Positions 7,215 through 21,067 of a DNA stretch of 64,000 bases are shown here, piece by piece. A program made the position numbers and the translations under genes. Under the pieces are notes generated by a model. The model was not told where the DNA came from. It did not search any database and saw only the letters and a program-made list of their open reading frames with translations. The DNA is taken from positions 124,001 through 188,000 of IMG/VR virus record IMGVR_UViG_3300032322_002561, one strand, 5' to 3'. The first letter of the stretch is position 1, and each line of letters opens with the position of its first letter.

Positions 7215-7784
7215 TCATAGACCTGCCTTGGCCAGTGCAGCGCCTTTGTTGAAACTGGGACTATAAGGACTGTTGCCATCAACACCACCACGTGCTTTTG
7301 ACCATGCATAGCCTGCACGATGACCCGAACAGTCTTTGGTGCATTCGCTACCCAAGAACTGTAGTTCGTCCAACTGTTGTTCAGTTACTGGACCACCTTC
7401 AACCCAGGCATCACAGGTACGCTTGGCAGCACATTTGAATTTCAAGAATTTACAGTAGCCCAAATCGCCTGCATCAATGGTGTCGTGCGGATCACTTCCA
7501 GGTTCAGTGCCAATGCCACGGGCAATACAATCTAACATATCTTCTGATATGTCAAAGGCCGCACAGTTGCCACAACGGTTTTGTTTTACTGATTCAATGT
7601 CGTCGGTGTTCCACTTGTCAGCCAATTCAACCCAGTATTCTTCATTGGGCTCGTTGGGGTTCAAGGGCCCATAGTGATATTCGTCTATGGCTTTTTGACG
7701 ATTACGTAAATTAAGATCGATGCTCTGTGTGGCCGGAGGACAACCTTTTTCCACTGCTTCGATCAAGTTAATTAAATCACGCAC
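7215..7784 (-). CDS. putative head-cargo protein with two Cys-rich modules
   Basis: Leader MRDLINLIE; CGNC..C..C..C module; LDE then LQFLGSECTKDCSGH module. Confidence 0.6.
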   Translation of the reverse strand: MRDLINLIEAVEKGCPPATQSIDLNLRNRQKAIDEYHYGPLNPNEPNEEYWVELADKWNTDDIESVKQNRCGNCAAFDISEDMLDCIARGIGTEPGSDPHDTIDAGDLGYCKFLKFKCAAKRTCDAWVEGGPVTEQQLDELQFLGSECTKDCSGHRAGYAWSKARGGVDGNSPYSPSFNKGAALAKAGL

Positions 7785-7899
7785 TTTCTTTTAACCTTTG
7801 ACGATAAATGTGCAAGGCCTCGGTGAGATTCGCAGCCTCTATAACTTCGACTCGTTTACTGCCGTCGGTATTGGTGTGGGTAAATGTATAAGTTTTCAT
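7777..7899 (-). CDS. 40-aa small protein MKTYTFTHTNTDGSKRVEVIEAANLTEALHIYRQRLKESA
   Basis: Fills the gap with overlaps to both neighbours; translated by hand. Confidence 0.6.
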   Translation of the reverse strand: MKTYTFTHTNTDGSKRVEVIEAANLTEALHIYRQRLKESA

Positions 7900-9995
7900 A
7901 GTGTCATGCTACGTGGTTGTCCAAACACACGAATGGCTGCTTGTAATTGACGACGAAATGGTTCACCACTGCGATCATATTCAATCATGAGCCAGTTGCC
8001 CAGGCGATCTTGCACAAGTCCATATTCTTGTGCGGTACGGGCACTGTCCACTGTGAAGTAGTGCAGACGTCGAGCTCGTGGTTTACCGGGTTGTTGTTCA
8101 CGTACCAATGTAAGTTTGGCCACTGCCTGTTGCACGTCTTGTGGAAGTTTTTGCAAGGGTATTGGTACTTGTGTATATTGTCCAGTGGCAGAGTCGGTGT
8201 GAACCAGGATCATGGTACCATTGGGTTTTTTGGTAAATCTATAACCCAGGCGTTGCATGTCATTGCGTAGATCGGGTATTAGGCCTTGGGGATCACCGCG
8301 CACAATAAGCGTGATCATGTTAAGGGCTTTTTGTATGGCTAGATCTTGTCCAGGCAATTTGGGTTGTGGTTCCATGGCTCCGGGCAATGGAACGATTTCC
8401 TCTTGTAGCATACTATACAATGCACGGAACACTGATTCTTTTGTACCTGTTTTCATAACTCTTGGATCCCATGGTGGTGTTTGACTTCTGGTAGGAAACT
8501 TTAAAACTGTTGCGTCTGTTGGTTGTGGTGTAGCAGGTGTTGTGGATTGCGGTATGTTGACCACGTTGCTGCCACCACGCAGCGGTAGCTCGGATTGTGT
8601 TGGTTGCGGCGTTATTGGTTCTGCAAACAGGTCGCCTTGTTCGGGGTCGGCAGTTAGATCTTTTGCCAGTTTGTCTAATGCCGGGGATCGTGTTGGTTCG
8701 GCCTTGACCTTGGGAGTTGGTTTACGTGCTTTGCGACGTTGGACTGGTTTTTCTTTACCGGTAGCAACTGCTGGTGTAGTGTCTGGTTCTGCTGGTGTGG
8801 CAGGTTTCTTTTTTGGCGCAGCTTTGGATCTCACAGCTGGCTTTTCATCAGACTTTGGTTTGGGAGTAGGCAATGCAGGCTTCTTACCAGCGGCAATGTC
8901 TGCGGCTGTGTCTTTGGTGTCTGTGGGAGTCATACCTTGATCTTTGGCCCAGGTATCAAGTTCTTGGAAACGTCGTTCTTTGTCTTGTAGATCAGCCACC
9001 AATTCGGCCTGTTGTTGACGCAGTTGGCGTTCTTGTGCCAAGAGATCTCGTATGTCTTCGCGATCCTGTGCCTGCGTTTTGCGATAGTCAAAAATCAAGG
9101 CTTCAAGGTCGCTTTGTGCTTCAGGATTTTCAGCTCGTAGTTGGCGCATGATTCTCTGCGTTCTAGGATTGTCAAAATCTGTTTCTCTTTTTTCAAGCAC
9201 CGTGCTCTTGCCTAACTGCACAGTGCGGTCAGGAGGCAAAGGCTTTTGGGGAGTGCGTAAGCGGTGCATGACAATGGTTTGTTCAATGCGTTTGGCCACG
9301 GCTTGGGCTGTATCTGCATCTTCTTGTTTGACAGCTTCTTGAAACTTTTCCAACAAGGGCTTGATTTCGGGATATATGTCATCAAAGCTGGTGATTTTAT
9401 TGGTCAAGGCCTTGACCACTTGATTGGTATTGTATATTTTCAAACGATTCCGAATGGTGTAATATGCACCCAGCGTAAATGCTGTGCCGCCCAAGATTGC
9501 AACAGCCAAGGCATCTCGTAAGGCATTGTCAAGAAAAGGATCTACTGCTTCCAGTGTTCGGGTGGGTGGTTTTATACGATCTATTCTTGGTGCAATGTTG
9601 GCTGTGACATCAGTAGCCGCCGGTGCTGTGCCGTATTTGGCTTGTTTTTTCTTTTCTTTGCTGAGTTTTTGTTGTGCGATCAAAGGAGCTAGCCTGCGAT
9701 CAAGATCGGCCAACTGTGCTCGCAGTTGTGGTAGTTGGCTTGGCTTGTATGGTATACCATAGATTTTGCTGGCCTGTTTGATAGCATCCTCGTAGTCCAA
9801 TACTATGCCTTCACGACCAGCATCTCGCATGGCCATGGCAGCTGCTTTGTACAGCAGTTGATTGGCAGTGATTTCTGGACCTACTTTGACTTCTTCCACA
9901 GGCACACAGTTGGGCACCTGACGATCGCCTTTTTTCTTCATGCCAGCTTGGCGGTAACCCTTCCAGCAACGTTCAGATAAATCTTGAAACTTCAT
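7896..9995 (-). CDS. multi-module putative head-cargo polyprotein
   Basis: Leader MKFQDLSE; CWKGY...PNCVP peptide; coiled-coil and Pro/Ala/Lys segments separated by [LV]xE. Confidence 0.65.
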   Translation of the reverse strand: MKFQDLSERCWKGYRQAGMKKKGDRQVPNCVPVEEVKVGPEITANQLLYKAAAMAMRDAGREGIVLDYEDAIKQASKIYGIPYKPSQLPQLRAQLADLDRRLAPLIAQQKLSKEKKKQAKYGTAPAATDVTANIAPRIDRIKPPTRTLEAVDPFLDNALRDALAVAILGGTAFTLGAYYTIRNRLKIYNTNQVVKALTNKITSFDDIYPEIKPLLEKFQEAVKQEDADTAQAVAKRIEQTIVMHRLRTPQKPLPPDRTVQLGKSTVLEKRETDFDNPRTQRIMRQLRAENPEAQSDLEALIFDYRKTQAQDREDIRDLLAQERQLRQQQAELVADLQDKERRFQELDTWAKDQGMTPTDTKDTAADIAAGKKPALPTPKPKSDEKPAVRSKAAPKKKPATPAEPDTTPAVATGKEKPVQRRKARKPTPKVKAEPTRSPALDKLAKDLTADPEQGDLFAEPITPQPTQSELPLRGGSNVVNIPQSTTPATPQPTDATVLKFPTRSQTPPWDPRVMKTGTKESVFRALYSMLQEEIVPLPGAMEPQPKLPGQDLAIQKALNMITLIVRGDPQGLIPDLRNDMQRLGYRFTKKPNGTMILVHTDSATGQYTQVPIPLQKLPQDVQQAVAKLTLVREQQPGKPRARRLHYFTVDSARTAQEYGLVQDRLGNWLMIEYDRSGEPFRRQLQAAIRVFGQPRSMTL

Positions 9996-10828
9996 TTTTT
10001 CTTGTTGCCCCAGTTGGCGGCACCTTTCTTACGACATTGCACAAGGGCACCCGATGCATAAGCTGACGGCCAGACCTTGTAACGACTTTTTACTTTTTGA
10101 TAGCAGGCGTCTTGTTTTTCATCAACTTGATCTCGGTTGACATGTTTTTCTAAACGATCAATAGCACCCTTCATGTCTTCGCGACCTTGCCGGGCTGCGG
10201 CCTGACGCTTTGCTTCTATTTCGTCGTGTTTGCGTTCGCGTTCAGCGGCAGCACGTCTAAATTTTTCCAGTGCAGTTTGACCTTTGCCTTCATCCATGTC
10301 ACGCTGACGACGCTTGCCAAAGTATCGTTGTATGGCAGGATCATCACGATCCACTGCTACCAGGCGCTCGGGACTGATATACCAGCCTTTACCGTCACGA
10401 TCTAGTATGCGAACTCTACGCTCGCTGGGATCACCACTCATGCGGAACACTTCCCCATATTCGCCATCCTGACTGTCACGCACATAATCACCGTCTCGCA
10501 AGCGGCTATCTTCGTCATCATACCAGTCATCGTCGTCTGTGTATTGTTCTTTTACTTTGGTGGCCACATTTTTAGCGGCTCCTCTACGTTCTGGATCGGG
10601 ATCTTCTCTGCGCTTCTTGGCCGCAGCTGACGCACGACCTTTTTTGCCCAGGGCATGTGCCTTGCTCTGTGGCAGGCATTTTGGTTTGCCTTCTGATTCT
10701 GATCCTCGGGCACAACTGCCACGGATTTTACCATCGGGGCCAAAACGCACCCATTTTTCCTTGAACCACTTGCGTAGGTTTTCTTCAACGGGGTCAACAG
10801 TGTTTTCAAATAAATCAGTCAAAATCAT
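9992..10828 (-). CDS. putative head-cargo polyprotein of basic Cys-paired peptides and an SH3/KOW-like module
   Basis: Leader MILTDLFE; junctions VEE/NLRKW, VKE/QY, MDE/GK, VDE/KQDAC. Confidence 0.65.
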   Translation of the reverse strand: MILTDLFENTVDPVEENLRKWFKEKWVRFGPDGKIRGSCARGSESEGKPKCLPQSKAHALGKKGRASAAAKKRREDPDPERRGAAKNVATKVKEQYTDDDDWYDDEDSRLRDGDYVRDSQDGEYGEVFRMSGDPSERRVRILDRDGKGWYISPERLVAVDRDDPAIQRYFGKRRQRDMDEGKGQTALEKFRRAAAERERKHDEIEAKRQAAARQGREDMKGAIDRLEKHVNRDQVDEKQDACYQKVKSRYKVWPSAYASGALVQCRKKGAANWGNKKK

Positions 10829-10859
10829 GGTTTTGTTCTCTCTGAATATTTATTGCGTT

Positions 10860-11447
10860 TTAACGCCCAGTCCACTGTGCAATCATGCTGGCATCACCCG
10901 AATATATGCTGCGACCCGGTCTCAAGGCCTTTATGCTGCGGCGTCCCGACTGTATGGGGAAAGTGTATGTGATCGTGTTGCGAGTTTCATGCACTATTTC
11001 GTCACCGGGCTGGGGGTTGTAATCCTGTTGAGACTGTTTGGCGATTCCGCTCACTTCCACACCAGGTATGCGGTTTAACTTTAACCACATGGCCTGCCCA
11101 TGCTTGGTTTGTGTTTTGCCGGCTCTCAGCGTTAATTTTAATATGCTGAGTGCTATGCCATACAGGGCCAAGCCCAGACCCTGTCCACGATAGTCAGGAT
11201 CAGTAGCCACAGTTTCCACACGATAACTGTCTAGCATATCTCCTGTGGGTAGCACATCTAATTCAGCTACCAAACTGTTTTGATCAAAGATCATGATTTG
11301 TTTGAGATCGCCCTCGTGTTGTACGGCATAACTGTAGCCACTGCCGCCGGGCAAAGGTCGGGCACCACGAGGGGTCTGCATGGGTGCAAGAGTATCCTTG
11401 TCGCCAAAGTCACCCTGTGGTATACGAGCTATTTCCATGATTTTCAT
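10860..11447 (-). CDS. GNAT-family acetyltransferase
   Basis: DPDYRGQGLGLALY acetyl-CoA motif, QTKHGQAMW; leader MKIMEI. Confidence 0.8.
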   Translation of the reverse strand: MKIMEIARIPQGDFGDKDTLAPMQTPRGARPLPGGSGYSYAVQHEGDLKQIMIFDQNSLVAELDVLPTGDMLDSYRVETVATDPDYRGQGLGLALYGIALSILKLTLRAGKTQTKHGQAMWLKLNRIPGVEVSGIAKQSQQDYNPQPGDEIVHETRNTITYTFPIQSGRRSIKALRPGRSIYSGDASMIAQWTGR

Positions 11448-12328
11448 GCTGGTTCCTGAACAGCCATAGACTGTAAACTCTGGCTGGCAATATTTACGTC
11501 AAATCCTTTGTTGACAAACCACTGTATCAATGTCAGACGTTGGTCATGGGATAAACTCTGCACCACATCTCTATGCACTGCCGATATCAAGTTTGTGGGC
11601 ACACTGTACCACTTGTCCAACATATTGTGCTCGATGTCTGCTTGGGTGATGTAGTATGTATCTGCCAACGACAAGTCTGATTTGGCTGTGATTTCAGCGG
11701 CAGTAATACAGTTATAAAAGTTGTGCGCAATCAAACTGTAAAAAATAAATTCAGATTCCCAATAATCAAACGGTTTTGATACTTCGTTGAAAAGATAGTC
11801 TATATCAAAACTCACACAGTGTTGAGCAATTACAGTGTTCATTACAAACGGAGTCAGGACTTCGTATGTGTGTGATGTAGAATTGAGACCAAGGATCTTG
11901 GCTACACTATCTAGCCAGGTTTGTCTGGGTCCAGTGGCACACACATCAGTTATGATGGGTCTGCCATTCAAGCAAGGCCAGTTTGACAATGATTGCTGAC
12001 GCCAGAAAAAATTCTTGCTGTCCAAGACCATGTAACGTTCATTTGAGATCAACTGTGATGCCATGAGTTTTAACAACTGTTGTCTACGATAACCGTGCCG
12101 ATCGGGTCGATGATAGTGTGTTTCTGGTAACAAAGTTGGAGACAGTTTTAATGTGTGTCGATGATAGAATGGAGTTAATTTTTCTCTCCAAATTTCTAAA
12201 TCACTTTGGTCCTGAACAATGATCCAGTGCGTGATAGGATTTGTAACAAAAAGATCAATACTGTGAGCTTGAAACAACAGTTGATTCAAGTCACTCAACT
12301 GTGATACAGTTACAACATCCTGAATCAT
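11444..12328 (-). CDS. putative glycosyltransferase-like protein (paralog family)
   Basis: GYRRQQLLKL, VLDSKN, TPFVM, SEFIFY. Confidence 0.55.
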   Translation of the reverse strand: MIQDVVTVSQLSDLNQLLFQAHSIDLFVTNPITHWIIVQDQSDLEIWREKLTPFYHRHTLKLSPTLLPETHYHRPDRHGYRRQQLLKLMASQLISNERYMVLDSKNFFWRQQSLSNWPCLNGRPIITDVCATGPRQTWLDSVAKILGLNSTSHTYEVLTPFVMNTVIAQHCVSFDIDYLFNEVSKPFDYWESEFIFYSLIAHNFYNCITAAEITAKSDLSLADTYYITQADIEHNMLDKWYSVPTNLISAVHRDVVQSLSHDQRLTLIQWFVNKGFDVNIASQSLQSMAVQEPA

Positions 12329-12504
12329 GATTTGACTTCTCTCACGTTGCTGACTATACTGTCAACGCCATATTGTGCTCTAAGCAGGCGTTTGGCCAAT
12401 TCATAATTGCGAGCAACCACCTGTGTGTCAATCAAGGTGGCACTGTTTTTAAGTTTGACTCTTGCATGAAAAGTCTTGAGATTTTCCAATTCTTTGACTT
12501 TCAT
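12325..12504 (-). CDS. small protein (MKVKELE...)
   Basis: ATGA overlaps with both neighbours; start at 12504 preferred. Confidence 0.65.
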   Translation of the reverse strand: MKVKELENLKTFHARVKLKNSATLIDTQVVARNYELAKRLLRAQYGVDSIVSNVREVKS

Positions 12505-15500
12505 TTCTTTTTGGATCTTCCTGACTTCATGTTGGCACACCAGTGATACATTTTGGCTTTCTCACCACTGGCATTTTTAGCTCGTTGACGTAGGCTTGTA
12601 ACTGAGCCATTGCAACTGGCCCCCGCACGTTTTACACGTCCAGGACGGCTCTTGCCTTTGACCTTGCCATCTGCAAAGTTTTCATTGACGTCATCACCTA
12701 GCTTGCGAGCCATTTGAATCTGCTGGGTCATGTTTTCTATGTCATGCTGATCAATGGCTTGCCCAATAGCGCTGCGAGATTTCAGCGAACGTACCACTGG
12801 CTCCACGGGTTCCACACGGTCCATGGATTTTTTCTTGATGACGGGTCTTGGTGGCACAGCACCTGCACCTGATACAGGATCTATGGCCTCGGCTACAATT
12901 CGGGTTCTAAGGAGTCCTGGTGGCATGCCCTCTTGTTCTTGTTGAGCTATCCAGGCACGCACTTCGTCAGCTGTGGCGTTACGCATGAAATGTATCACAC
13001 GGTCAGGATCATCATCCAGAACCAACTCGTAGTTCTGTCGCCGTGGCTCAAAGTTCTGTGCCACATCTGTGTTGACATCCTGCACACCCAGTCTGCGTTG
13101 TACGTCCACACTATCTCTTTGATCATCGGCGGCCTGCTGACCTTTTCTGTAGCCATAGTCAGCAGTGTCGTTGGGCAAGTCTTTCATCTTGAGCCACCGA
13201 TCAAACACACGACTGGCTTCCTGATCACTGTTGGCATGGAATCGGTCAACTACTCGCAAGTCTACAGTGCGTTGATCCACAATTTCATAGTTGTATTGAG
13301 TTGCTGTTGCGGGTTTCTTGACAATACGTTTGGCCACTTGTGCTCTGGGGCTGACTTTGGGCTCTGGCGTCTCATCAGGCCTGCGATATATGTTCCAGTC
13401 CAAGGACCGTTCTCCATATTCGTATTGGACCCGTTGCGTGGCTTTGTCAATGTCAGAAGCACGCATGGTCAGGAGCATTTTGCCCGTTGCATCAAACACA
13501 TCAAACCAGGGCTGTTTGATGCGCACATCAAGCTCATTAATGTCCCGACCGTATTGTCTCAAGAAAAGATCATAGGCTGAGTCATAGTCTTTAGCATACA
13601 GTGTGCCAACGATTCCGTCAGGGCTGTCTTTGTTGTCTCTGCGATAGACTTCGTATTCGTCTTTGCCTGTGCCAGGCAACTCTTTCTGTAGCACAGTATC
13701 AGCCCATTGTTTCTTTAACTGTTCTTTGTTGATGGTACCTGCTGAAAACTCCGAGAACAAGCGAAGTTGGTCCGCATATTGTTCGTTGTCTTGGGTAACC
13801 AACTTGTATAGTTTCTTGGCATACTCCTGGCGTTCGGCACTGGGATCACCGGCTATGGCCATGGCTCGGGCAAAACGCAACATGGTATTTTCTAATATGC
13901 CGATTTCTTCATCGCCTTTGGCCAACCAGTCGCCTCCGGGGCTACGGAATTCCACATAGCCATCTTGTAAATGTGCTGACGTATACTTGCTGGTGCCCAC
14001 ACCTTTTTGCAGTTCTCGGTAGGCCAACTCAGTGAGTCCATGACGCAACAATTCTACCACACCGGCTGGATCACTGCGTCCACCTTTGATGTTTTGTTTT
14101 AACTTGTCCAAGGCCGACGCACAATAGGTGTTAGCTGTACGACCAAACTGCTGTTGCACATACTTGTCGCCCATGAACAGGATCAACTTTACATAGTCTA
14201 TACCGACACTATCGTTGGCGTCTTCAGATTTGATCCGAGGCAAGCTCACGCCCATGTGCAGGCCTGTGGAACTATTGGTATAGGCGTTGCCACCGTTGGG
14301 ATCATTGGCCCAGTCTACCACTGCCTTTAATTTTTCTATGGCCATCAGCAAGGGCATGGGTGGGCTGACTATTTCAAGACCCATTTCTTCACTCTTGTCA
14401 TCGGGATCCAGGCTGCCATCGGGTTCTATGATCCAGGTGCCTTCTCTGCGTGCGGCACTGTGATAATTGGTGCTGACTTTGACAGGCATGTCCACTGCAT
14501 CTTGCAAGCTACTACCAATGTCGTCCCAATCACGGCTACCATTGTTGCTCTGGGCATCCATGTTCCACACAGGCCAGTCCAAGTTGTATTCGTTGGCAAT
14601 GTCACTCATCCAACGCAGTCCGACATCTGAAAAGAAGCTGTCACTGTCAGGACTATAGCTGTCACGGAAATCGTCCAGGGCCTGATCATAATAGCCGTCT
14701 TGTTTACGTATGCTGGTTTCTACTTCTTCGTCTAGGATGGCGTCGGCATCATCCACGGCTTCCATGTAAGTCCTGTAGTCAGGATTCTGTTCAGCAAAAG
14801 CTTCTTGTTCAGCTGAGGTCGTAAATTTGGGTGCGTCTGAACCCAGTCTAAATATCTTTTCGGCTTGATCGTCAGTGAGTTCCATGCCATCTGTTAGCAC
14901 GGCCAGTATACGCTCGCCCATGGGCACTTCGTCGAGATGCTGTTCACGCACTAGGTCTTCGGCTTCGTTGCCAAAATCTTCACGCACCCGCTCATCGTAC
15001 CAGTTCATGTAGGTTTCGTCTAAGTCGTTTTCCAGTCTGCTGACTCCGCGATCACTGAGTCCAAACCCATATTCATCGTTACTGAAAAACTCTATAACCT
15101 GCTGTATGCTGTAGGCACGCTCGTCGTAGTCGTAGTCGGGCTCAGGATCCATCTCATCACTTTCACCCTGTGTGTCACGGAATATGAGTTCAGCTTCAAA
15201 ACCAGCACGTATGCCCTTGGCTGCATCCGACGTGGCAAACTTTTCCAAGGCCGTGGGACTCATTTTGACTTCGTCAAGATCATCTTCATCTAGTTGTTTA
15301 CCTTGTGCTCGCGCTATGGCATCTTGCCCGGCAACAAAATCTTTTGCCGCAATGCCTTGGCCGGCTGACTGGCGTTGTTTGAGTCCTGGCAATAGTGGCA
15401 AGCCTTTTTTCTCGTGCGACTTCAGTTGTGCTTGCAATCGTTGTTGTAGAGCTGGTGTATCATAGAACAGGGCATCCACAGCATCTAGGATATAGACCCA

Positions 15501-17867
15501 GGGTGCGGCACTGTCGCTTTGTATGCTACGAGTGTCACCGGTCTGTAGATCCTGGATGTCCATGCTGTCTATGGCCAGTGGTCCAGCTACACCAGATCTG
15601 ATCATGTCTACTGGGCGCACCACAAAGTTGGCTGACTCACGACTGCGACGGTTTGTTAGCCGTACTTCATAGGTGGTGGGATTAATTTCGTCTACCAGTT
15701 CAGCACGCCATCCGTGTTGTGTTTCAGACTCGCCTTGTGCTGACTCGTCTACATGCCCATTCATGCCAAACTGATTGGCTGGAGCACGTTGATTGCGTGG
15801 GTCAATGTATTCATAGGGGTCGTCTTTGAACTGTGCCAGCTCTTGAGCCAGGCGTTCTTCCAGGGTGCTTTCGCGCAGGTTCACAGTTTTCATCAACAAG
15901 CCAGGTCGTCCTTGGCTGTCAGTTTTGAGTGCCATTTTGTTGGCTTGTCGACCAACTTCACCAGGCCGTATGTCTTGAGTCAAGGCCATGCTGTAGCGTG
16001 GATCTTTAGCCTGCTTTTTTGTGGGAATATATCCACTGGCATTCTCAGCCATTTTCCGTCTCATCTGTTGTGCCAGCTCATAATTTTGTAAAAATTCTAG
16101 TTCATTACGAGTCATTGGTTTATTGGCTACTTTTTTTGCTCTCAAAAATCGATAGTAGTCGTCTTTGTCTTTTTGACTTTGGTTGACGGCTATTTTTAGT
16201 TCTTCGTTTTGTTGGAACTGTTTGTCAAATTCTGCTTTTTTACGATAATATTCTTTTTTGTAGGCTTCAAAGTCAGCGGCCGCCTGTTCGGCACTTTGTG
16301 GTGGCACACGCGGTGCTGGTGGCAAAGTGCCCTGACGTTTTTGCATGCGATACAGCCAACTTTGATTTTGTGCATTGGCATCACCGCCCAGGGCGCGACT
16401 GTAGTTTATGATCTCTTGACGGAGATCTTCCTGAGCACCAGTCCAACCCATGCGTTTGAGTGTCTGTGCTGTGCGTGCCGCATCTACTGCACCACCAAGA
16501 GCTTGTCCTATTGTGCGATCTTGTGCTTGTGCACCACCGGCAGCCAGTGCAGCGGTCAAGGCACCGGCAGCCAACTTGCTTTTGATACCTTCGTCAACAC
16601 TTTCTTTTTCAAAGTATTCAGGGTAGGCATCGGTAAAGTCACGCATGATGATGCCGGCCACAGCATGTGCTTCGTTTTCCCAGTCACTGCCGGTTTCCCC
16701 GGCATCTGCAGGCAAGGGTTCAATTTCATGCTGGCGGCAGTGTGCCAGTTCATGTGCCGTGGTGCGCATGATGTCCAAGATATGTCGATTGGGCAGGCTC
16801 ACGTGCAAGGTATGTGTTTCAGGGTCAAATCTACCAAAGCTGGTGTTGCCTTCACTCCAGGCAGCATCAGAATGCAATTCTATCACAGGCAGTTTTTCAA
16901 TGCCCAGACGCTTGGCCACATAACGAACAAACCGTGATATGATTTTTTTGGTCAGTGGTGTTTCACTGAGAAACATTCTAGTTGATGGGCTGACCCCGTC
17001 CGGAGTAGAAGCTTCACGTATGTCCTGGCTCTCGCCACCACCGTCCCCTCCACCACCTTCTGAGCCGGCAGCATGATCTTGCCCAGCATAGCCAAAACCT
17101 GGATACCAGTAACCACCAAATGCACCGTAGCGAAACTTTTTCTTTTTGGCTTTCTTTCGGCGTTCGTTTAAGCTGAGTTCGCGATCCTTGAGTTCGTTGC
17201 GACGATCAAACAGGCGTTGGATATAGCTCTGACTGCGCAACATCTTGTAGGCCAAGTTTTCTGGACCAAATTCTCCGTTGGTTTCCAGTCCGGCCTTGCG
17301 CATCTGTTTGACTTTTTCTATGGTGGCTGTGACCTGTTCAAGGCTGTCACTCTCAATGGCCTGTTCAACTCTAGCACCAATGTCTTCGTACTTGTGTTGC
17401 ACGCTCATGTCGTCAATCTTGGCACGACGTCTTTTTGGCACTGAGATCCAGTCATCATTGAGCACGCTGTAGATGCCCTGACTCACGTGTGGTTGATCGG
17501 CATCTTGCACATACAGTTCCACATCATAGCCACCTATGCGAATGTCATGTTCATCGTTGTATTGATATTTTTTGGCATCAAACAGCTCGCGATAGACTTC
17601 GTCTTCGGGAACCTGCACCACTAGATGTAGATCAATGTCACTGTGTGGAGCATAACTGTAGGCGGCATTGCTGCCGCTGAGCGTGATGTCTTGGATTTGC
17701 AGATCGCTTACGCCAAGAAATTCTTGGAAATCTGCCGCAATTGCCAACAGTTTTTCACGCACTTCAGGAAGCAGTTTTTCGTCACTGCCAAAAATCCGTG
17801 GATTTAAGTTGTCGTGAAACTTTACAGCATCAGCAAGATTATAGGTCTGCAGCTCATGGATGTTCAT
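12501..17867 (-). CDS. 1788-aa polyvalent protein: Pol-beta-type nucleotidyltransferase, HExxH metallopeptidase, COOH-NH2 amidoligase and small modules
   Basis: GSNA...SDIDLH...VELYVQ; TTAHELAH...ENEA; GFEAEL...DGSL...LEIVSPP...STGLHMGVS...VEFRSPG. Confidence 0.8.
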   Translation of the reverse strand: MNIHELQTYNLADAVKFHDNLNPRIFGSDEKLLPEVREKLLAIAADFQEFLGVSDLQIQDITLSGSNAAYSYAPHSDIDLHLVVQVPEDEVYRELFDAKKYQYNDEHDIRIGGYDVELYVQDADQPHVSQGIYSVLNDDWISVPKRRRAKIDDMSVQHKYEDIGARVEQAIESDSLEQVTATIEKVKQMRKAGLETNGEFGPENLAYKMLRSQSYIQRLFDRRNELKDRELSLNERRKKAKKKKFRYGAFGGYWYPGFGYAGQDHAAGSEGGGGDGGGESQDIREASTPDGVSPSTRMFLSETPLTKKIISRFVRYVAKRLGIEKLPVIELHSDAAWSEGNTSFGRFDPETHTLHVSLPNRHILDIMRTTAHELAHCRQHEIEPLPADAGETGSDWENEAHAVAGIIMRDFTDAYPEYFEKESVDEGIKSKLAAGALTAALAAGGAQAQDRTIGQALGGAVDAARTAQTLKRMGWTGAQEDLRQEIINYSRALGGDANAQNQSWLYRMQKRQGTLPPAPRVPPQSAEQAAADFEAYKKEYYRKKAEFDKQFQQNEELKIAVNQSQKDKDDYYRFLRAKKVANKPMTRNELEFLQNYELAQQMRRKMAENASGYIPTKKQAKDPRYSMALTQDIRPGEVGRQANKMALKTDSQGRPGLLMKTVNLRESTLEERLAQELAQFKDDPYEYIDPRNQRAPANQFGMNGHVDESAQGESETQHGWRAELVDEINPTTYEVRLTNRRSRESANFVVRPVDMIRSGVAGPLAIDSMDIQDLQTGDTRSIQSDSAAPWVYILDAVDALFYDTPALQQRLQAQLKSHEKKGLPLLPGLKQRQSAGQGIAAKDFVAGQDAIARAQGKQLDEDDLDEVKMSPTALEKFATSDAAKGIRAGFEAELIFRDTQGESDEMDPEPDYDYDERAYSIQQVIEFFSNDEYGFGLSDRGVSRLENDLDETYMNWYDERVREDFGNEAEDLVREQHLDEVPMGERILAVLTDGMELTDDQAEKIFRLGSDAPKFTTSAEQEAFAEQNPDYRTYMEAVDDADAILDEEVETSIRKQDGYYDQALDDFRDSYSPDSDSFFSDVGLRWMSDIANEYNLDWPVWNMDAQSNNGSRDWDDIGSSLQDAVDMPVKVSTNYHSAARREGTWIIEPDGSLDPDDKSEEMGLEIVSPPMPLLMAIEKLKAVVDWANDPNGGNAYTNSSTGLHMGVSLPRIKSEDANDSVGIDYVKLILFMGDKYVQQQFGRTANTYCASALDKLKQNIKGGRSDPAGVVELLRHGLTELAYRELQKGVGTSKYTSAHLQDGYVEFRSPGGDWLAKGDEEIGILENTMLRFARAMAIAGDPSAERQEYAKKLYKLVTQDNEQYADQLRLFSEFSAGTINKEQLKKQWADTVLQKELPGTGKDEYEVYRRDNKDSPDGIVGTLYAKDYDSAYDLFLRQYGRDINELDVRIKQPWFDVFDATGKMLLTMRASDIDKATQRVQYEYGERSLDWNIYRRPDETPEPKVSPRAQVAKRIVKKPATATQYNYEIVDQRTVDLRVVDRFHANSDQEASRVFDRWLKMKDLPNDTADYGYRKGQQAADDQRDSVDVQRRLGVQDVNTDVAQNFEPRRQNYELVLDDDPDRVIHFMRNATADEVRAWIAQQEQEGMPPGLLRTRIVAEAIDPVSGAGAVPPRPVIKKKSMDRVEPVEPVVRSLKSRSAIGQAIDQHDIENMTQQIQMARKLGDDVNENFADGKVKGKSRPGRVKRAGASCNGSVTSLRQRAKNASGEKAKMYHWCANMKSGRSKKK

Positions 17868-17882
17868 AAGCTGTATTTACCG

Positions 17883-18749
17883 TTATTTTGTGCTTGTGGC
17901 TTCTTCCAGAACCGCAGGTTGTGTGCTGTCAGCAGGATCGCTAGATGCCAAGACTTCGGGTTCCTGTATGTCAACCGGCTGTTTTGCAGCCTCGTGAGCA
18001 CCGCCCACTTTGGGTTGAACCAGCGCATGCAAATCTTGATACAGTTTGTCCTGCGTGGCACCATCAAATATGTATGTGCCAATGTGTTTGAGCAAGATAC
18101 GTTTGTCAATGTAGACCTGACCACCTAGATCACGCCAGTTTTCACAAAAGGTCCAGTCTTCACTATAGTAACGACCTTCGCGCACGGCTGTGTCAAAATA
18201 GGTCTTCATGTAGGGATTGAGCTCTTCTGGCAAGCCAATGTCATTGGTAAACGGTTTCACAGCCGGATGTGCATCCAATTTTTCAAACACTTCGCGCTTG
18301 ATCAACAAGAATCCAGTACCAGTCTTGGTTACTTCAACCAAGTTGTCTTCGCCTTGTTCTTTGCCAGGAATACCATTCACACACCATTTGACCGGCAACG
18401 ATTTCATGGGATATAATCCGCCAATCACATCAACTCTGCGATCCAACAGCACCAACAAGTGCCATGGTTCCCAACCAATATCAGCATCAATAAACATAAG
18501 ATGTGTGCTGCCTTGTGTGTGCAAGAACTTGGCTGTGAGTGTGTTTCTAGCACGACTAATCAAGCTCTCATTGGTCATAGTTTCCACGGTCCAGTCAATG
18601 CCCAGTTGCCGACAGGCATTACTCCACTTGATAAAACTCATAAAAGTTTGCTCACTCAACATGCCACCATAACAGGGCATGCAAATGTGTACTCGTGTGG
18701 TTTTTAGATATTCTAGATCAACATTGATTTGTATCTGCTGTTCAGGCAT
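17883..18749 (-). CDS. GT-A fold glycosyltransferase-like protein
   Basis: SLISRARN, FIDADI (DxD), GTGFLLI, SEDWTFC. Confidence 0.75.
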   Translation of the reverse strand: MPEQQIQINVDLEYLKTTRVHICMPCYGGMLSEQTFMSFIKWSNACRQLGIDWTVETMTNESLISRARNTLTAKFLHTQGSTHLMFIDADIGWEPWHLLVLLDRRVDVIGGLYPMKSLPVKWCVNGIPGKEQGEDNLVEVTKTGTGFLLIKREVFEKLDAHPAVKPFTNDIGLPEELNPYMKTYFDTAVREGRYYSEDWTFCENWRDLGGQVYIDKRILLKHIGTYIFDGATQDKLYQDLHALVQPKVGGAHEAAKQPVDIQEPEVLASSDPADSTQPAVLEEATSTK

Positions 18750-18799
18750 TCGGGCTCTCCATAAAATAGTCTTCTATTTACAGAGTATAGCAGTTGTGA

Positions 18800-19798
18800 T
18801 TATTTTTTACGACCAGCGCAGTGCGCTTTTTGGCTAAAGCCCCTGGGGTTGTTGCAGTTGATTGAACGCTTGTATTTGGCAGACCACTTTTCGTCTATGT
18901 AGTCATCGCTCTCATTGTATGTGGCGGCCCAGCCTTGATTTTCGTCCATTTCTTTTTGTTTTTTAGCCACGTAATTTGTGATACGGCTCTTGGTCACACT
19001 GTGCTGTGCTTTTGTGGGATTGGCATAATTGCCTGGTTTGGAGTAAACCAGCTTATCGCCGCGATATATTTCTACTCGATCAGGATGATATTTGATAGTG
19101 TACCCTTGATACGCAAAAGATTTCACATCGTAGGTAGAAGTTGACACTGGTCGAGTCATGGTTTTTTTCTGTTTGGCCACTGCTTCGGGATTGGAGGGGA
19201 ATGATTCTTCCATGCCCAATATAGCAGTGTCTAGTAACTTTACTACATTTTGTGCCAATGCAGGATTCTTTTGTGTGATGGGGTACAGGCTCATGACAAG
19301 AGCCTGTTTGCGTCGGTCATTTAATCGAGGCCATGCCGCACGTATTTCTGTAGCCGAAGTCATACCAGGACCAAATTCCACAGTGGGCAAATAGGCCATA
19401 TAAGCATGTTGAGCAAATGGTGCTAGATCCTGTTGTCCTTTGTAGGGCTGTAGATAACTGGGCGATCCATCTTTTTTGACGCCACCTGCTTGTGGCGGTT
19501 TGTCAGCATCTTTTTCACTGCGCACAAAGATCAACTGATCGGTTTCAGGGTCAAATCCAGCAGTGATTTCCTTGGCTTGGAACGGGCTTTTGACTTGTAC
19601 AAAATGGCCGGGTTCAACACCGGCCAACTTGGCCAGCTTTTCTTTTACAGCAAATGGAAAAGGTCGTGCTGACGTATCATTTGTGGCTGCCACAAACACT
19701 TCAGCATTGGGGAACGCTTTGCGTGCAGAGTTATACAGGGCATAATGACCTGCATGAAAAGGATGGAACCCACCGGGCATAACGACAATTTGCTTCAT
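18800..19798 (-). CDS. HIGH-family nucleotidyltransferase with C-terminal small modules
   Basis: PGGFHPFHAGH, SATEIR; C-terminal IDE/KWSAKYKRSINCNNP...C. Confidence 0.75.
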   Translation of the reverse strand: MKQIVVMPGGFHPFHAGHYALYNSARKAFPNAEVFVAATNDTSARPFPFAVKEKLAKLAGVEPGHFVQVKSPFQAKEITAGFDPETDQLIFVRSEKDADKPPQAGGVKKDGSPSYLQPYKGQQDLAPFAQHAYMAYLPTVEFGPGMTSATEIRAAWPRLNDRRKQALVMSLYPITQKNPALAQNVVKLLDTAILGMEESFPSNPEAVAKQKKTMTRPVSTSTYDVKSFAYQGYTIKYHPDRVEIYRGDKLVYSKPGNYANPTKAQHSVTKSRITNYVAKKQKEMDENQGWAATYNESDDYIDEKWSAKYKRSINCNNPRGFSQKAHCAGRKK

Positions 19799-20352: not shown

Positions 20353-20362
20353 AGTGACTTAT

Positions 20363-21067
20363 TTATAGCCGTTTGATCACGGGCACGCTTTTGCGTATTG
20401 CACCAGGTGCCAGTATGGCCAGCATGGTTTCGTACTGTAGATTGTTGTGTTCGATATAAAAGTAACGCTGACACCAATCACTGCGCCAGGTCTTGCCAGG
20501 TTGATTCAACCAGTGCCATAAAGCTCGACTGGCTTGTGCCTGTACAGATTCCTGATCTTGTTGAGCCACAATCCAGGCCTTTAATTGCGACTTGGTATCC
20601 AGTGATATCTTGCGCTCGCGGAAAAAAGTTCTATATTTGAATTTTGGATTATTGATCACTATGCTGTCTTTTGGTTTATCTACCACAGCTTGTCTTATAA
20701 CTCTACCAAATTCTACCTGCGGGCAACGATACAAGGCATGGCACAGATTTGCATCGTTGGTATAAACCGTGGCCCAATCCATGCTGACCACCAATTTGAA
20801 CTCGGCTGGCCAATTCAACAATAGGTCTCGAGTGGCGCACAAATTTTCTACTGATTCCTGTGTAAAACACTTGCTCTTGCCATCAGAACGATTATTTAGA
20901 TGTATGCTCCAGCTGCGTCGTAGGTTGATGAATTTGTTCAAGGTTTGCGGGCTAGGCATGCCACGCAAGGCAAAAATTTCAGTTTGTTTAAATGTAAAAG
21001 CGTAACTGTATAGATCATAATACAGTCGATCTCGATGTTCAATCTTGATTGCTAATTGAGTCAACAC
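20363..21067 (-). CDS. hypothetical protein
   Basis: Long ORF in operon order. Confidence 0.65.
   Translation of the reverse strand: MLTQLAIKIEHRDRLYYDLYSYAFTFKQTEIFALRGMPSPQTLNKFINLRRSWSIHLNNRSDGKSKCFTQESVENLCATRDLLLNWPAEFKLVVSMDWATVYTNDANLCHALYRCPQVEFGRVIRQAVVDKPKDSIVINNPKFKYRTFFRERKISLDTKSQLKAWIVAQQDQESVQAQASRALWHWLNQPGKTWRSDWCQRYFYIEHNNLQYETMLAILAPGAIRKSVPVIKRL

What the first reader, a model, noticed from the sequence alone, without database searches (positions are those of the whole stretch)
7215..18889. Library of 25-75-aa basic peptides with paired cysteines released from the polyproteins
Seen: at least six short Lys/Arg-rich modules with two Cys, each flanked by an xxE site or a terminus. 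They are LQFLGSECTKDCSGH.. (7215-7364), RCWKGY..PNCVP (about 9895-9971), KQDACY..VQCRKK (9992-10117), NLRKWF..SC..PKCLP (about 10550-10780), NFADG..SC..HWCANM (12501-12680) and KWSAK..NCNNP..HCAGRKK (18800-18889). Inference: after cleavage they would be disulfide- or metal-stapled mini-proteins, acting as DNA-condensing internal peptides or as injected inhibitors of host defence in the manner of T4 IPI*.
Basis: partly seen in the sequence, partly recalled or inferred. Interest (0 to 1): 0.7.

Follow-up and report, generated by a model that had tools for sequence, protein, structure and literature searches.

The report
Shuffled basic cysteine-pair mini-domains of phage head proteins
Six short, basic, two-cysteine peptide modules at the ends of five neighbouring phage genes belong to widespread, freely shuffled mini-domain families that sit behind T4-type head-protease cutting motifs, so they are probably released inside the capsid, although their job there is still unknown.

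Summary
All six peptides are on the minus strand at the stated places. Each has exactly two Cys, a pI of 9.2-11.2, and a [ILV]-x-E tripeptide or an ORF end on each side.

They are not chance. Each belongs to a conserved module family with hundreds of copies in uncultured phage contigs. M5 alone occurs in 2,203 protein clusters at 50% identity. The modules occur in at least 32 arrangements, as stand-alone mini-ORFs, or fused to many unrelated enzymes.

The Cys pairs are nearly invariant. When lost, both go together (M5: 81 with both, 10 with neither, 0 with one).

A [ILVMF]-x-E site precedes the module core in 73% of copies, against 6% background. 31% of module ORFs start with a leader like the T4 capsid-targeting sequence MKTYQEFIAE.

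T4-like cyanophages carry the same modules in one protein between the terminase genes. That protein was found by mass spectrometry in S-SM1 virions (Sullivan 2010).

This contig (68% complete) holds no head genes. Complete relatives encode a T4 gp21-type protease.

Most likely these are protease-released internal head peptides. Cleavage, disulfide or metal stapling, and function are all inferred. The strong conservation argues against IPI*-like arms-race inhibitors.

The parts
7215..7784 (-). 189-aa ORF (GTG start, leader MRDLINLIE). Residues 1-135 are a Cys-containing domain annotated as high-potential iron-sulfur protein in related phage records. M1 is fused at the C-terminus.
   Evidence: The N-part is 86-90% identical to stand-alone ORFs in L035, L084, L159, L014 and L008, where M1 sits on another ORF.
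7218..7364 (-). M1: 49 aa beginning LQFLGSECTKDCSGH, preceded by LDE, ending at the ORF end.
   Evidence: Both Cys are present in 54/54 unique copies. L-x-E precedes 65/65 copies. 61/63 copies are C-terminal. 407 relatives were found in IMG/VR.
7896..9995 (-). 699-aa ORF: leader MKFQDLSE, then M2, then a conserved region with a hydrophobic segment, a Pro/Lys/Ala/Thr-rich stretch and a C-terminal domain.
   Evidence: It is the only ORF of 843 in the contig that fits the strict CTS-like leader pattern.
9891..9971 (-). M2: 27 aa (RCWKGY...PNCVPVEE) between LSE and VEE.
   Evidence: Both Cys are present in 72/73 copies.
9992..10828 (-). 278-aa ORF: leader MILTDLFE, M4, an unrelated acidic/beta middle part, then M3. 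Its stop overlaps the start of the 699-aa ORF (ATGA).
9995..10117 (-). M3: 41 aa (KQDACY...WPSAYASGALVQCRKK...), preceded by VDE, ending at the ORF end. It gives a weak, sub-threshold match to Pfam DUF5872.
   Evidence: 96 copies have both Cys and 4 divergent copies have neither. In the AF2 model it forms three short helices with pLDDT 67-80.
10547..10780 (-). M4: 78 aa (NLRKWFKEKWVRF...SC...PKCLP...KKRR...NVATKVKE) between VEE and VKE.
   Evidence: 110/115 copies have both Cys.
12501..17867 (-). 1788-aa multidomain ORF: a conserved N-terminal region, an HExxH motif, Amidoligase_2 at residues 1120-1261, and M5 at the C-terminus.
12504..12680 (-). M5: 59 aa (NFADGK...ASC...HWCANMKSG...), preceded by VNE, ending at the ORF end.
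   Evidence: 81 copies have both Cys, 10 have both replaced and none has one alone. It occurs in 2,203 clusters. 137/155 copies are C-terminal. The AF2 core has pLDDT 74-88 and three helices.
18800..19798 (-). 332-aa ORF: a cytidylyltransferase-like (NMNAT-type) N-domain, a middle part, and M6 at the C-terminus.
   Evidence: The fusion to M6 is kept in syntenic relatives.
18803..18889 (-). M6: 29 aa (KWSAKYKRSINCNNPRGFSQKAHCAGRKK), preceded by IDE, ending at the ORF end.
   Evidence: Both Cys are present in 95/95 copies. [ILVMF]-x-E precedes 99/102 copies. It stands alone as a 51-aa ORF in phage Bellamy.

Best explanation
The six peptides are copies of six unrelated, autonomously evolving mini-domain families. 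A seventh family, DUF6321, occurs in relatives.

In T4-like marine and freshwater phages and related jumbo phages these families form the ends of a set of head-internal proteins.

Proposed mechanism:
- The precursors are made late.
- They are taken into the prohead. Many carry an N-terminal leader like the T4 capsid-targeting sequence.
- A T4 gp21-type prohead protease cuts after the Glu of the [ILV]-x-E that precedes each module.
- This frees 3-9 kDa, strongly basic peptides and, where present, the enzyme domain that lay between them.
- The peptides stay with the packaged DNA as charge-neutralising or DNA-bound partners and leave with it at infection.
- The two Cys act as a pair, forming a disulfide once the virion is in oxic water or a small metal site together with the adjacent invariant His. 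The pair stabilises a fold that can exist without it.

Shown here: module autonomy and shuffling, Cys-pair covariation, the conserved site and leader, protein-level purifying selection, restriction to phages, virion presence of one multi-module homologue, and a gp21-type protease in complete relatives.

Inferred: cleavage itself, retention in the head, stapling chemistry, and DNA binding.
For: Module families and shuffling:
- At least 600 stretches each for M3, M6 and M5, and 434 for M1, were found in IMG/VR.
- There are 473 unique module ORFs in 32 architectures.
- M5 occurs in 2,203 clusters at 50% identity.
- Partners include NT5C, Zeta-toxin/AAA kinases, cytidylyltransferase, Pterin_4a, FMN reductase, GH19+LysM, dCMP deaminase, Sigma70_r4, GNAT and DUF192.
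- The stretch between M4 and M3 is a swappable cassette.
- M1 is fused to different ORFs in relatives whose neighbouring domain is 90% identical.
- Leader+M6 and leader+M6+M5 exist as whole ORFs.

Cys pairs:
- M1 54/54, M6 95/95, M2 72/73, M4 110/115.
- M3 has 96 copies with both and 4 with neither.
- M5 has 81 with both, 10 with neither and 0 with one.

Cleavage-type site:
- [ILVMF]-x-E ends within 3 residues of the module core in 463/633 copies, against a background of 6.0%.
- It is 65/65 for M1 and 99/102 for M6.
- T4, phiKZ and SPN3US proteases cut after Glu. T4 Alt is cut at ITE-6 and LTE-619 (PMC5694885).

Leader:
- 70/229 module ORFs fit the leader pattern, against 46/800 same-strand neighbours and 0/372 opposite-strand ORFs.
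- 60/137 M5 representatives fit it.
- Examples are MRATEFITE and MKTYQEFISE, against the T4 CTS MKTYQEFIAE (PMC8442874).

Virion evidence:
- T4-GC119 is SSM1_115 (M4-M3-M2-DUF6321).
- It was detected in S-SM1 virions with 13 counts (PMC3037559 Suppl. Table 8).

Protease:
- Peptidase_S77 is present in 5 of 10 large module-bearing records, including all 3 that are at least 90% complete.
- In G006 it lies between an acidic core-like protein and a coiled-coil scaffold.
- G007 is syntenic with this window.

Selection: aa identity is 86-89%, but only 39-46% of conserved residues share the codon.

Phage-restricted: only 26 loci in 185,579 species genomes, all on MAG contigs. Atlas look-alikes are all Uroviricota.
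Against: - No prohead protease, capsid, portal or terminase gene was found on this contig. It is only 68% complete, so this is uninformative rather than negative.
- Only the 699-aa ORF has a strict CTS-like leader here. The 332-aa ORF has none.
- Syn9 proteomics did not detect its homologue.
- [ILV]-x-E is present in only 53-68% of M2, M3 and M4 copies.
- A conserved hydrophobic-x-Glu could be part of each fold.
- No structural or sequence match indicates DNA binding.
- The AF2 models have low to moderate confidence.
- The T4 late-promoter motif is not enriched.
Confidence: 0.5

Rival explanations
1. Loading handles rather than payload. The modules bind the scaffolding core, the portal or the DNA so that the attached enzyme is packaged. 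Cleavage then discards or inactivates them, and the functional product is the cargo.
For: - The modules are constant while the cargo varies.
- They sit at termini.
- The same junction E|NFADGK flanks the cargo on both sides in 13/150 representatives.
- Their high conservation fits a conserved assembly partner.
Against: - Whole ORFs consist only of a leader plus modules, with no cargo.
- Many module ORFs already carry a separate CTS-like leader.
Confidence: 0.2
2. Uncleaved nucleic-acid-binding or localisation tails of cytoplasmic phage enzymes. The [ILV]-x-E is simply the first structural element of each module, and the proteins are not virion components.
For: - The partners are mostly nucleotide and cofactor enzymes that work in the cytoplasm.
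- The 332-aa ORF has no leader.
- Syn9 gp114 was not detected in virions.
- No head genes lie nearby in this contig.
Against: - The same tripeptide precedes six unrelated modules, 73% against 6% background.
- CTS-like leaders are enriched five-fold.
- The S-SM1 homologue is in virions.
- In cyanophages the gene lies between the terminase subunit genes, among structural genes.
Confidence: 0.17
3. Injected inhibitors of host defence in the manner of T4 IPI*. Each peptide would block a specific host nuclease or sensor.
For: - The route (leader, Glu-site trimming, small basic compact product) matches IPI*.
- Neighbouring cargo includes enzymes plausibly aimed at host nucleotide or NAD pools.
Against: - T4 internal proteins are highly diverse, with only the CTS conserved (PMC3012670).
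- These modules are 86-89% identical between very different phages infecting different hosts, under purifying selection.
- No PADLOC or anti-defence evidence was gathered.
Confidence: 0.08
4. DNA-level recombination linkers. The conserved stretches would be kept as shared homology that lets phages exchange gene cassettes, with the peptide sequence incidental.
For: - The modules flank swappable cassettes.
- Duplicated junctions occur.
- The distribution is mosaic even among close relatives.
Against: - Synonymous sites are largely randomised: nt identity is about 70% with aa identity 86-89%, and fewer than half of conserved residues share a codon.
- The paired Cys covariation is a protein-level signal.
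Confidence: 0.03

Closest known systems
[quoted passage not shown]
   Same: - They are small basic proteins.
- They have an N-terminal ~10-aa leader (MKTYQEFIAE) ending in [IL]-x-E, removed by prohead protease gp21.
- They are packaged with the DNA and ejected.
- Leaders here are near-identical in form (MKTYQEFISE, MRATEFITE).
   Different: - There is no sequence similarity in the mature parts.
- These modules are much smaller (27-78 aa), carry a conserved Cys pair and are strongly conserved rather than hypervariable.
- They occur as multiple beads per ORF, with predicted internal and C-terminal cuts as well as the N-terminal one.
- They were found only in cyanophage, marine or freshwater lineages among isolates.
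Cyanophage gene cluster T4-GC119 (Syn9 gp114, S-SM1 SSM1_115), a virion 'structural protein' of unknown role
   Same: - It is a true homologue of the 278-aa ORF plus the start of the 699-aa ORF: M4, M3 and M2 in the same order.
- tblastn against Syn9 gives E 5e-12 over 87% of the query.
- It was detected in S-SM1 virions.
   Different: - In cyanophages it is one ORF between the terminase small and large subunit genes, and it ends in DUF6321.
- Here it is split into two overlapping ORFs, lacks DUF6321, carries other middle and C-terminal parts, and is not next to terminase genes.
Ejection and inner-body proteins of phiKZ-like and SPN3US giant phages
   Same: Many head-internal proteins are trimmed after Glu at a short x-E motif by a gp21-related protease, sometimes at several sites and at both ends.
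   Different: The motif there is A/S/G-x-E, not [ILV]-x-E. No shared modules or Cys-pair mini-domains are reported.
Polyvalent proteins of phages (Iyer et al. 2017)
   Same: The 1788-aa ORF strings several enzyme-like domains plus an HExxH motif. It fits the idea of a multi-effector protein delivered with the DNA and cut into units.
   Different: That paper does not mention cysteines, cyanophages or Synechococcus. The processing proposed there is by the protein's own metallopeptidase, not the prohead protease.
Pfam DUF5872, DUF6321 and DUF5661
   Same: They are uncharacterised viral domains. DUF6321 and DUF5661 co-occur with the modules in cyanophage proteins. M3 weakly resembles part of DUF5872.
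   Different: M3 scores 20.6 bits, below the 27.5-bit cut-off. M1, M2, M4, M5 and M6 have no Pfam model at all.

Membership tests
T4-type CTS-directed, gp21-processed internal head proteins | An N-terminal ~10-residue leader of the CTS type ending in [IL]-x-E | tested here: met
   The 699-aa ORF (MKFQDLSE) fits the strict pattern, the only one of 843 ORFs in the contig to do so. The 278-aa ORF (MILTDLFE) and the 189-aa ORF (MRDLINLIE) fit loosely. The 332-aa ORF does not fit. Family-wide the rate is 31% against 5.8%.
T4-type CTS-directed, gp21-processed internal head proteins | A gp21-type (Peptidase_S77) prohead protease encoded by the same phage | tested here: inconclusive
   It is absent from this 68%-complete contig, which also lacks capsid, portal and terminase genes. 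It is present in all three module-bearing relatives that are at least 90% complete, and in two fragments.
T4-type CTS-directed, gp21-processed internal head proteins | Cleavage after Glu at the predicted sites | not testable with these tools
   Only motif conservation is available: 463/633 against a 6% background. The protease-substrate co-fold gave no answer.
T4-type CTS-directed, gp21-processed internal head proteins | Presence inside the mature virion | not testable with these tools
   A published virion mass-spectrometry study detected the S-SM1 homologue (13 counts) but not the Syn9 homologue. No data exist for this uncultured phage.
Cyanophage T4-GC119 (Syn9 gp114-like) | Sequence homology over most of the length, with M4-M3-M2 in order | tested here: met
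Cyanophage T4-GC119 (Syn9 gp114-like) | A single ORF between terminase small and large subunit genes, ending in DUF6321 | tested here: not met
   The gene is split by an ATGA overlap. The window proteins have no DUF6321. The contig has no terminase.
Pfam DUF5872 | A score above the gathering cut-off (27.5 bits) | tested here: not met
   M3 scores 20.2-20.6 bits and covers only profile positions 11-44 of 116.
Classical zinc finger, ribbon or knuckle | Four conserved metal ligands (Cys/His) within the module | tested here: not met
   Each module has only two conserved Cys, plus one invariant adjacent His in M1 and M6 and a mostly conserved one in M5. Cys-less M5 and M3 variants exist.
Polyvalent proteins (Iyer 2017), for the 1788-aa ORF only | Several unrelated effector or enzyme domains in one phage protein, with a processing peptidase | tested here: inconclusive
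   Amidoligase_2 is significant. The HExxH motif is seen in the sequence, but no peptidase profile matched. The other regions are unassigned.

The most novel reading that the evidence does not exclude
An ocean- and lake-wide natural cargo-loading system in T4-like and related jumbo phages, not described before. A small alphabet of protease-released, Cys-stapled basic mini-proteins would take the place of T4's internal proteins as DNA-packing partners. These mini-proteins would also serve as universal cassette ends, between which almost any enzyme can be inserted, packaged in the capsid, cut free and injected.
Probability: 0.3. Interest if true: 0.8.

Novelty: new variant of a known kind. Interest (0 to 1): 0.62.

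Why it matters
Internal head proteins are known in detail only for T4 and a few giant phages. For the abundant marine T4-like phages, what travels with the DNA is essentially unknown.

If these modules are what the motifs suggest, thousands of 'hypothetical' phage ORFs would gain a common reading: leader, cut sites, basic peptides, injected enzyme.

Virion peptidomes of cultured cyanophages become a direct test. The conserved leader and junctions would also give a natural blueprint for loading proteins into the capsids of non-model phages.

Cys-pair covariation in six unrelated mini-folds raises a further question: whether virion-internal peptides use the oxic-outside, reducing-inside switch as a release signal.

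Tried and rejected
- Near-identity DNA search of the region in the phage collection found no match.
- tblastn of M5 in isolate phages found no match. M5 is known only from metagenomic contigs.
- tblastn with Syn9 gp18-gp23 against the contig found nothing. The best hit turned out to be a radical-SAM-like ORF.
- Pfam gp21, gp23, portal and terminase profiles found no match on the contig.
- The 332-aa ORF's nucleotidyltransferase domain has no detectable relative among marine cyanomyophages. It therefore cannot be equated with the virion cytidylyltransferase T4-GC190.
- The T4 late-promoter motif TATAAATA occurs 3 times against about 1 expected, which is not informative. The sigma-70 promoter and terminator scans were not informative either.
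- The AF2 model of the 278-aa ORF has mean pLDDT 52, too poor for a fold search.
- Foldseek of the M5 model against the PDB found no match below E 7.
- A mixed M6+M5 alignment (A7) was mis-aligned by MAFFT and dropped.
- The co-fold of a relative's gp21-type protease with the M6 junction gave no answer, and counts neither for nor against.
- The polyvalent-protein paper does not mention cysteines, cyanophages or Synechococcus, and the jumbo-phage paper does not mention cysteine-rich regions, disulfides or internal proteins. The only paper naming DUF5872 merely lists it.
- Recombination-linker and chance explanations were rejected on codon and family evidence.

Full report
**What is there**

The window is part of a 236,309-bp IMG/VR virus contig judged 68% complete. 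The genes in 6-21 kb all lie on the minus strand. They are the ends of five ORFs:
- M1 is the last 49 residues of a 189-aa ORF.
- M2 follows an 8-residue leader in a 699-aa ORF.
- M4 and M3 are the N-terminal and C-terminal parts of a 278-aa ORF.
- M5 is the last 59 residues of a 1788-aa multidomain ORF.
- M6 is the last 29 residues of a 332-aa cytidylyltransferase-like ORF.

Each module has exactly two Cys and a pI of 9.2-11.2. Each is preceded by LDE, LSE, VDE, VEE, VNE or IDE. M2 and M4 are also followed by VEE and VKE. Each motif occurs once in the whole contig.

**They are conserved module families, not chance**

tblastn of the 278-aa ORF found 365 phage records, nearly all T4-like cyanophages. 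In these phages one protein lies between the terminase small and large subunit genes and carries the same modules in the same order:
- Syn9 gp114 and the S-RIM50 homologue carry M4-M3-M2-DUF6321.
- S-SRM01 gp206 carries M6-M4-M3-M2-DUF6321.
- In Bellamy, M6 is a separate 51-aa ORF just upstream.

Profile searches over the 352 fetched loci scanned (358 held, six annotation-derived ones set aside) gave 473 unique module-bearing ORFs in 32 different module orders.

A full HMMER scan of 1.84 billion cluster representatives found M5 in 2,203 clusters at 50% identity, which means about that many different host proteins.

Pfam has no model for M1, M2, M4, M5 or M6. M3 is a sub-threshold match to DUF5872.

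In 185,579 prokaryote species genomes, M3 occurs in only 26 loci. All are MAG contigs of scattered marine phyla, most simply read as mis-binned phage contigs. ESM Atlas look-alikes are all tailed-phage clusters named 'hypothetical protein'.

**The modules are autonomous**
- In an alignment of 20 homologues of the 278-aa ORF, M4 and M3 are conserved. The stretch between them is unrelated: DUF192 in most, something else here.
- The N-domain of the 189-aa ORF is 86-90% identical to stand-alone ORFs in relatives, where M1 sits on a different ORF behind M6.
- Whole ORFs consist of a leader plus M6, a leader plus M6 plus M5, or a leader plus M2 plus M4.
- A Pfam tally of 61 partner clusters shows nucleotidases, Zeta-toxin-like kinases, cytidylyltransferases, a pterin dehydratase, FMN reductase, GH19 with LysM, dCMP deaminase, a sigma-70 region 4 and GNAT.
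- M1 and M5 are almost always the extreme C-terminus (61/63 and 101/107). M6 and M2 often sit right behind the first Met.

**The cysteines**

| Module | Unique copies with both Cys | Other states |
|---|---|---|
| M1 | 54/54 | none |
| M6 | 95/95 | none |
| M2 | 72/73 | 1 truncated copy |
| M4 | 110/115 | 1 copy with one Cys replaced, 4 truncated |
| M3 | 96/100 | 4 divergent copies with neither |
| M5 | 81/92 | 10 with both replaced (K/Q, T/M, R/Q), 1 truncated, none with a single loss |

Paired loss says the two Cys work together and that the fold survives without them.

A His next to one Cys is invariant in M1 (C-x2-D-C-S-G-H) and M6 (A-H-C), and mostly conserved in M5. A disulfide and a small Cys2His metal site therefore both remain open.

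**Selection**

M3, M5 and M6 copies are 86-89% identical in protein to the window's copies. Only 39-46% of the conserved residues use the same codon. This is protein-level purifying selection. It is neither recent transfer nor DNA-level conservation.

**The junctions**

A [ILVMF]-x-E tripeptide ends within three residues of the module core in 463 of 633 copies (73%). At other positions of the same ORFs the rate is 6.0%. By module:

| Module | Copies preceded by the site |
|---|---|
| M1 | 65/65 |
| M6 | 99/102 |
| M5 | 86/106 |
| M4 | 78/114 |
| M2 | 68/119 |
| M3 | 67/127 |

Six unrelated folds share the same preceding tripeptide. This reads as a signal rather than as part of each fold.

It is the motif cut by T4-type prohead proteases:
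- The T4 CTS ends in IAE.
- Alt is cut at ITE-6 and LTE-619.
- phiKZ and SPN3US proteases also cut after Glu (PMC8442874 and PMC5694885).

**The leaders**

Of module ORFs with a recognisable start, 70/229 begin with M-[KR]-x(1-3)-[DEQN]-[FILVM]-x-(x)-E. Examples are MRATEFITE, MRAKEFISE and even MKTYQEFISE. The rate is 46/800 for same-strand neighbours and 0/372 for opposite-strand ORFs. Among M5 representatives it is 60/137.

The T4 capsid-targeting sequence is MKTYQEFIAE.

In the window, the 699-aa ORF (MKFQDLSE|RCW) is the only one of 843 ORFs in the contig that fits the strict pattern. The 278-aa and 189-aa ORFs fit loosely. The 332-aa ORF does not fit.

**Experimental anchor**

Sullivan et al. 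2010 (PMC3037559, Suppl. Table 8) list T4-GC119 as detected in purified S-SM1 virions with 13 peptide counts. It was not detected in Syn9 and is absent from S-PM2. T4-GC119 is SSM1_115. Its translation is an M4-M3-M2-DUF6321 protein.

**The protease**

This contig has no Pfam match to gp21, gp23, the T4 portal or the large terminase. The head module therefore lies in the missing third.

Of ten large module-bearing IMG/VR records, five have Peptidase_S77. These include all three that are at least 90% complete.
- G006 is 354,959 bp with terminal repeats and is 100% complete. It has an acidic core-like protein, the protease and a coiled-coil scaffold in a row.
- G007 is 320 kb and 92% complete. 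It is syntenic with window 12.5-20.3 kb at 65-83% nucleotide identity.

Seven further contigs share the gene order around the M6 and M5 ORFs.

**Interpretation**

The most economical reading is that these are internal head proteins of the T4 kind, built from a small alphabet of basic mini-domains with optional enzyme cargo. The prohead protease would then release 27-78-residue peptides of 3.2-8.6 kDa.

What the peptides do is not shown. Their charge and their occurrence as cargo-free ORFs favour a role of their own with the packaged DNA.

Their extreme conservation contrasts with the hypervariable T4 internal proteins (PMC3012670). It argues against host-specific defence inhibitors and for a universal partner: DNA, or the assembly or ejection machinery.

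The loading-handle variant and the uncleaved-tail variant remain live.

**Structure**

AF2 gives M3 as three short helices (pLDDT 67-80). M4 comes out as a helix, a hairpin and two helices (pLDDT 55-65), within an otherwise poor model. M5 is a three-helix unit with a core pLDDT of 74-88 and has no PDB match.

**Verdict**

This is a new variant of a known kind: CTS-targeted, gp21-processed internal proteins. It is widespread and essentially undescribed, and it is directly testable in cultured cyanophages.

Noticed in passing
window 9992-9995 (minus strand): The stop of the 278-aa ORF overlaps the start of the 699-aa ORF (ATGA after an A-run, AAGAAAAAATGAAG). In cyanophages M3 and M2 lie in one ORF, so here the ancestral gene is split into two translationally coupled ORFs. 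The second one gains a CTS-like leader.
   Followed up: partly
P0011, P0012, P0015 and 10 other representatives: In 13 of the 150 best M5-bearing representatives, the junction E|NFADGK occurs twice. It appears right after the N-terminal leader and again at the start of the C-terminal M5, so the same junction flanks the cargo. This looks like cassette insertion into a leader+M5 mini-gene, or an extended protease recognition site.
   Followed up: partly
window 7377-7784 (minus strand), residues 1-135 of the 189-aa ORF: A Cys-containing domain is annotated as 'high potential iron-sulfur protein' in related phage records (55% identity to an Actinomycetia phage). Pfam gave no match. It is 86-90% identical in several uncultured relatives.
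   Followed up: partly
L012, L022, L023, L026, L032, L159, L164 (M5 copies): There is a Cys-less M5 subfamily in which G-x-x-C becomes G-I-P-K and H-W-C becomes [HR]-W-Q, always both together. It is a natural control for what the Cys pair does.
   Followed up: partly
window 21039-23315 (minus strand): A 758-aa ClpA/ClpB-like ATPase (phrog_4871, E 2.6e-238) is about 40% identical to genes of Rak2-like and Atu_ph07-like jumbo phages.
   Followed up: partly
window 7896-9995 (minus strand), 699-aa ORF: Behind M2 lie a hydrophobic, membrane-helix-like segment (about residues 165-185) and a long Pro/Lys/Ala/Thr-rich stretch (about residues 380-520). This would suit an ejection or conduit protein. 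The stretch also causes a strong local GC and AT skew at 8-10 kb.
   Followed up: no
window 20360-20367 (minus strand): One exact T4-type late-promoter motif, TATAAATA, lies in the only sizeable intergenic gap upstream of the minus-strand run of genes that carries the modules. There are 3 matches in the window against about 1 expected.
   Followed up: no
L247 (G006:234752-238198): A complete 355-kb relative with terminal repeats has a very acidic 303-aa protein, a 212-aa Peptidase_S77 protease and a 366-aa coiled-coil protein in a row, the T4 order of core protein, gp21 and scaffold.
   Followed up: partly
L333-L358: All 26 matches to M3 in prokaryote species genomes are on contigs of MAGs from unrelated marine phyla, bacterial and archaeal. 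They are probably phage contigs binned by mistake.
   Followed up: no
contig position 51158-52375 (outside the window): A 406-aa radical-SAM/SPASM-like ORF sits in a run of plus-strand ORFs of similar size. It was seen while chasing a false protease lead.
   Followed up: no
window 10860-12328 and 17883-18749 (minus strand): The module-bearing ORFs are interleaved with a weak GNAT-like ORF (195 aa), a DUF6492 ORF (294 aa) and a conserved 288-aa ORF with no family match. The 288-aa ORF is 73-88% identical in relatives. None of the three carries a module.
   Followed up: no
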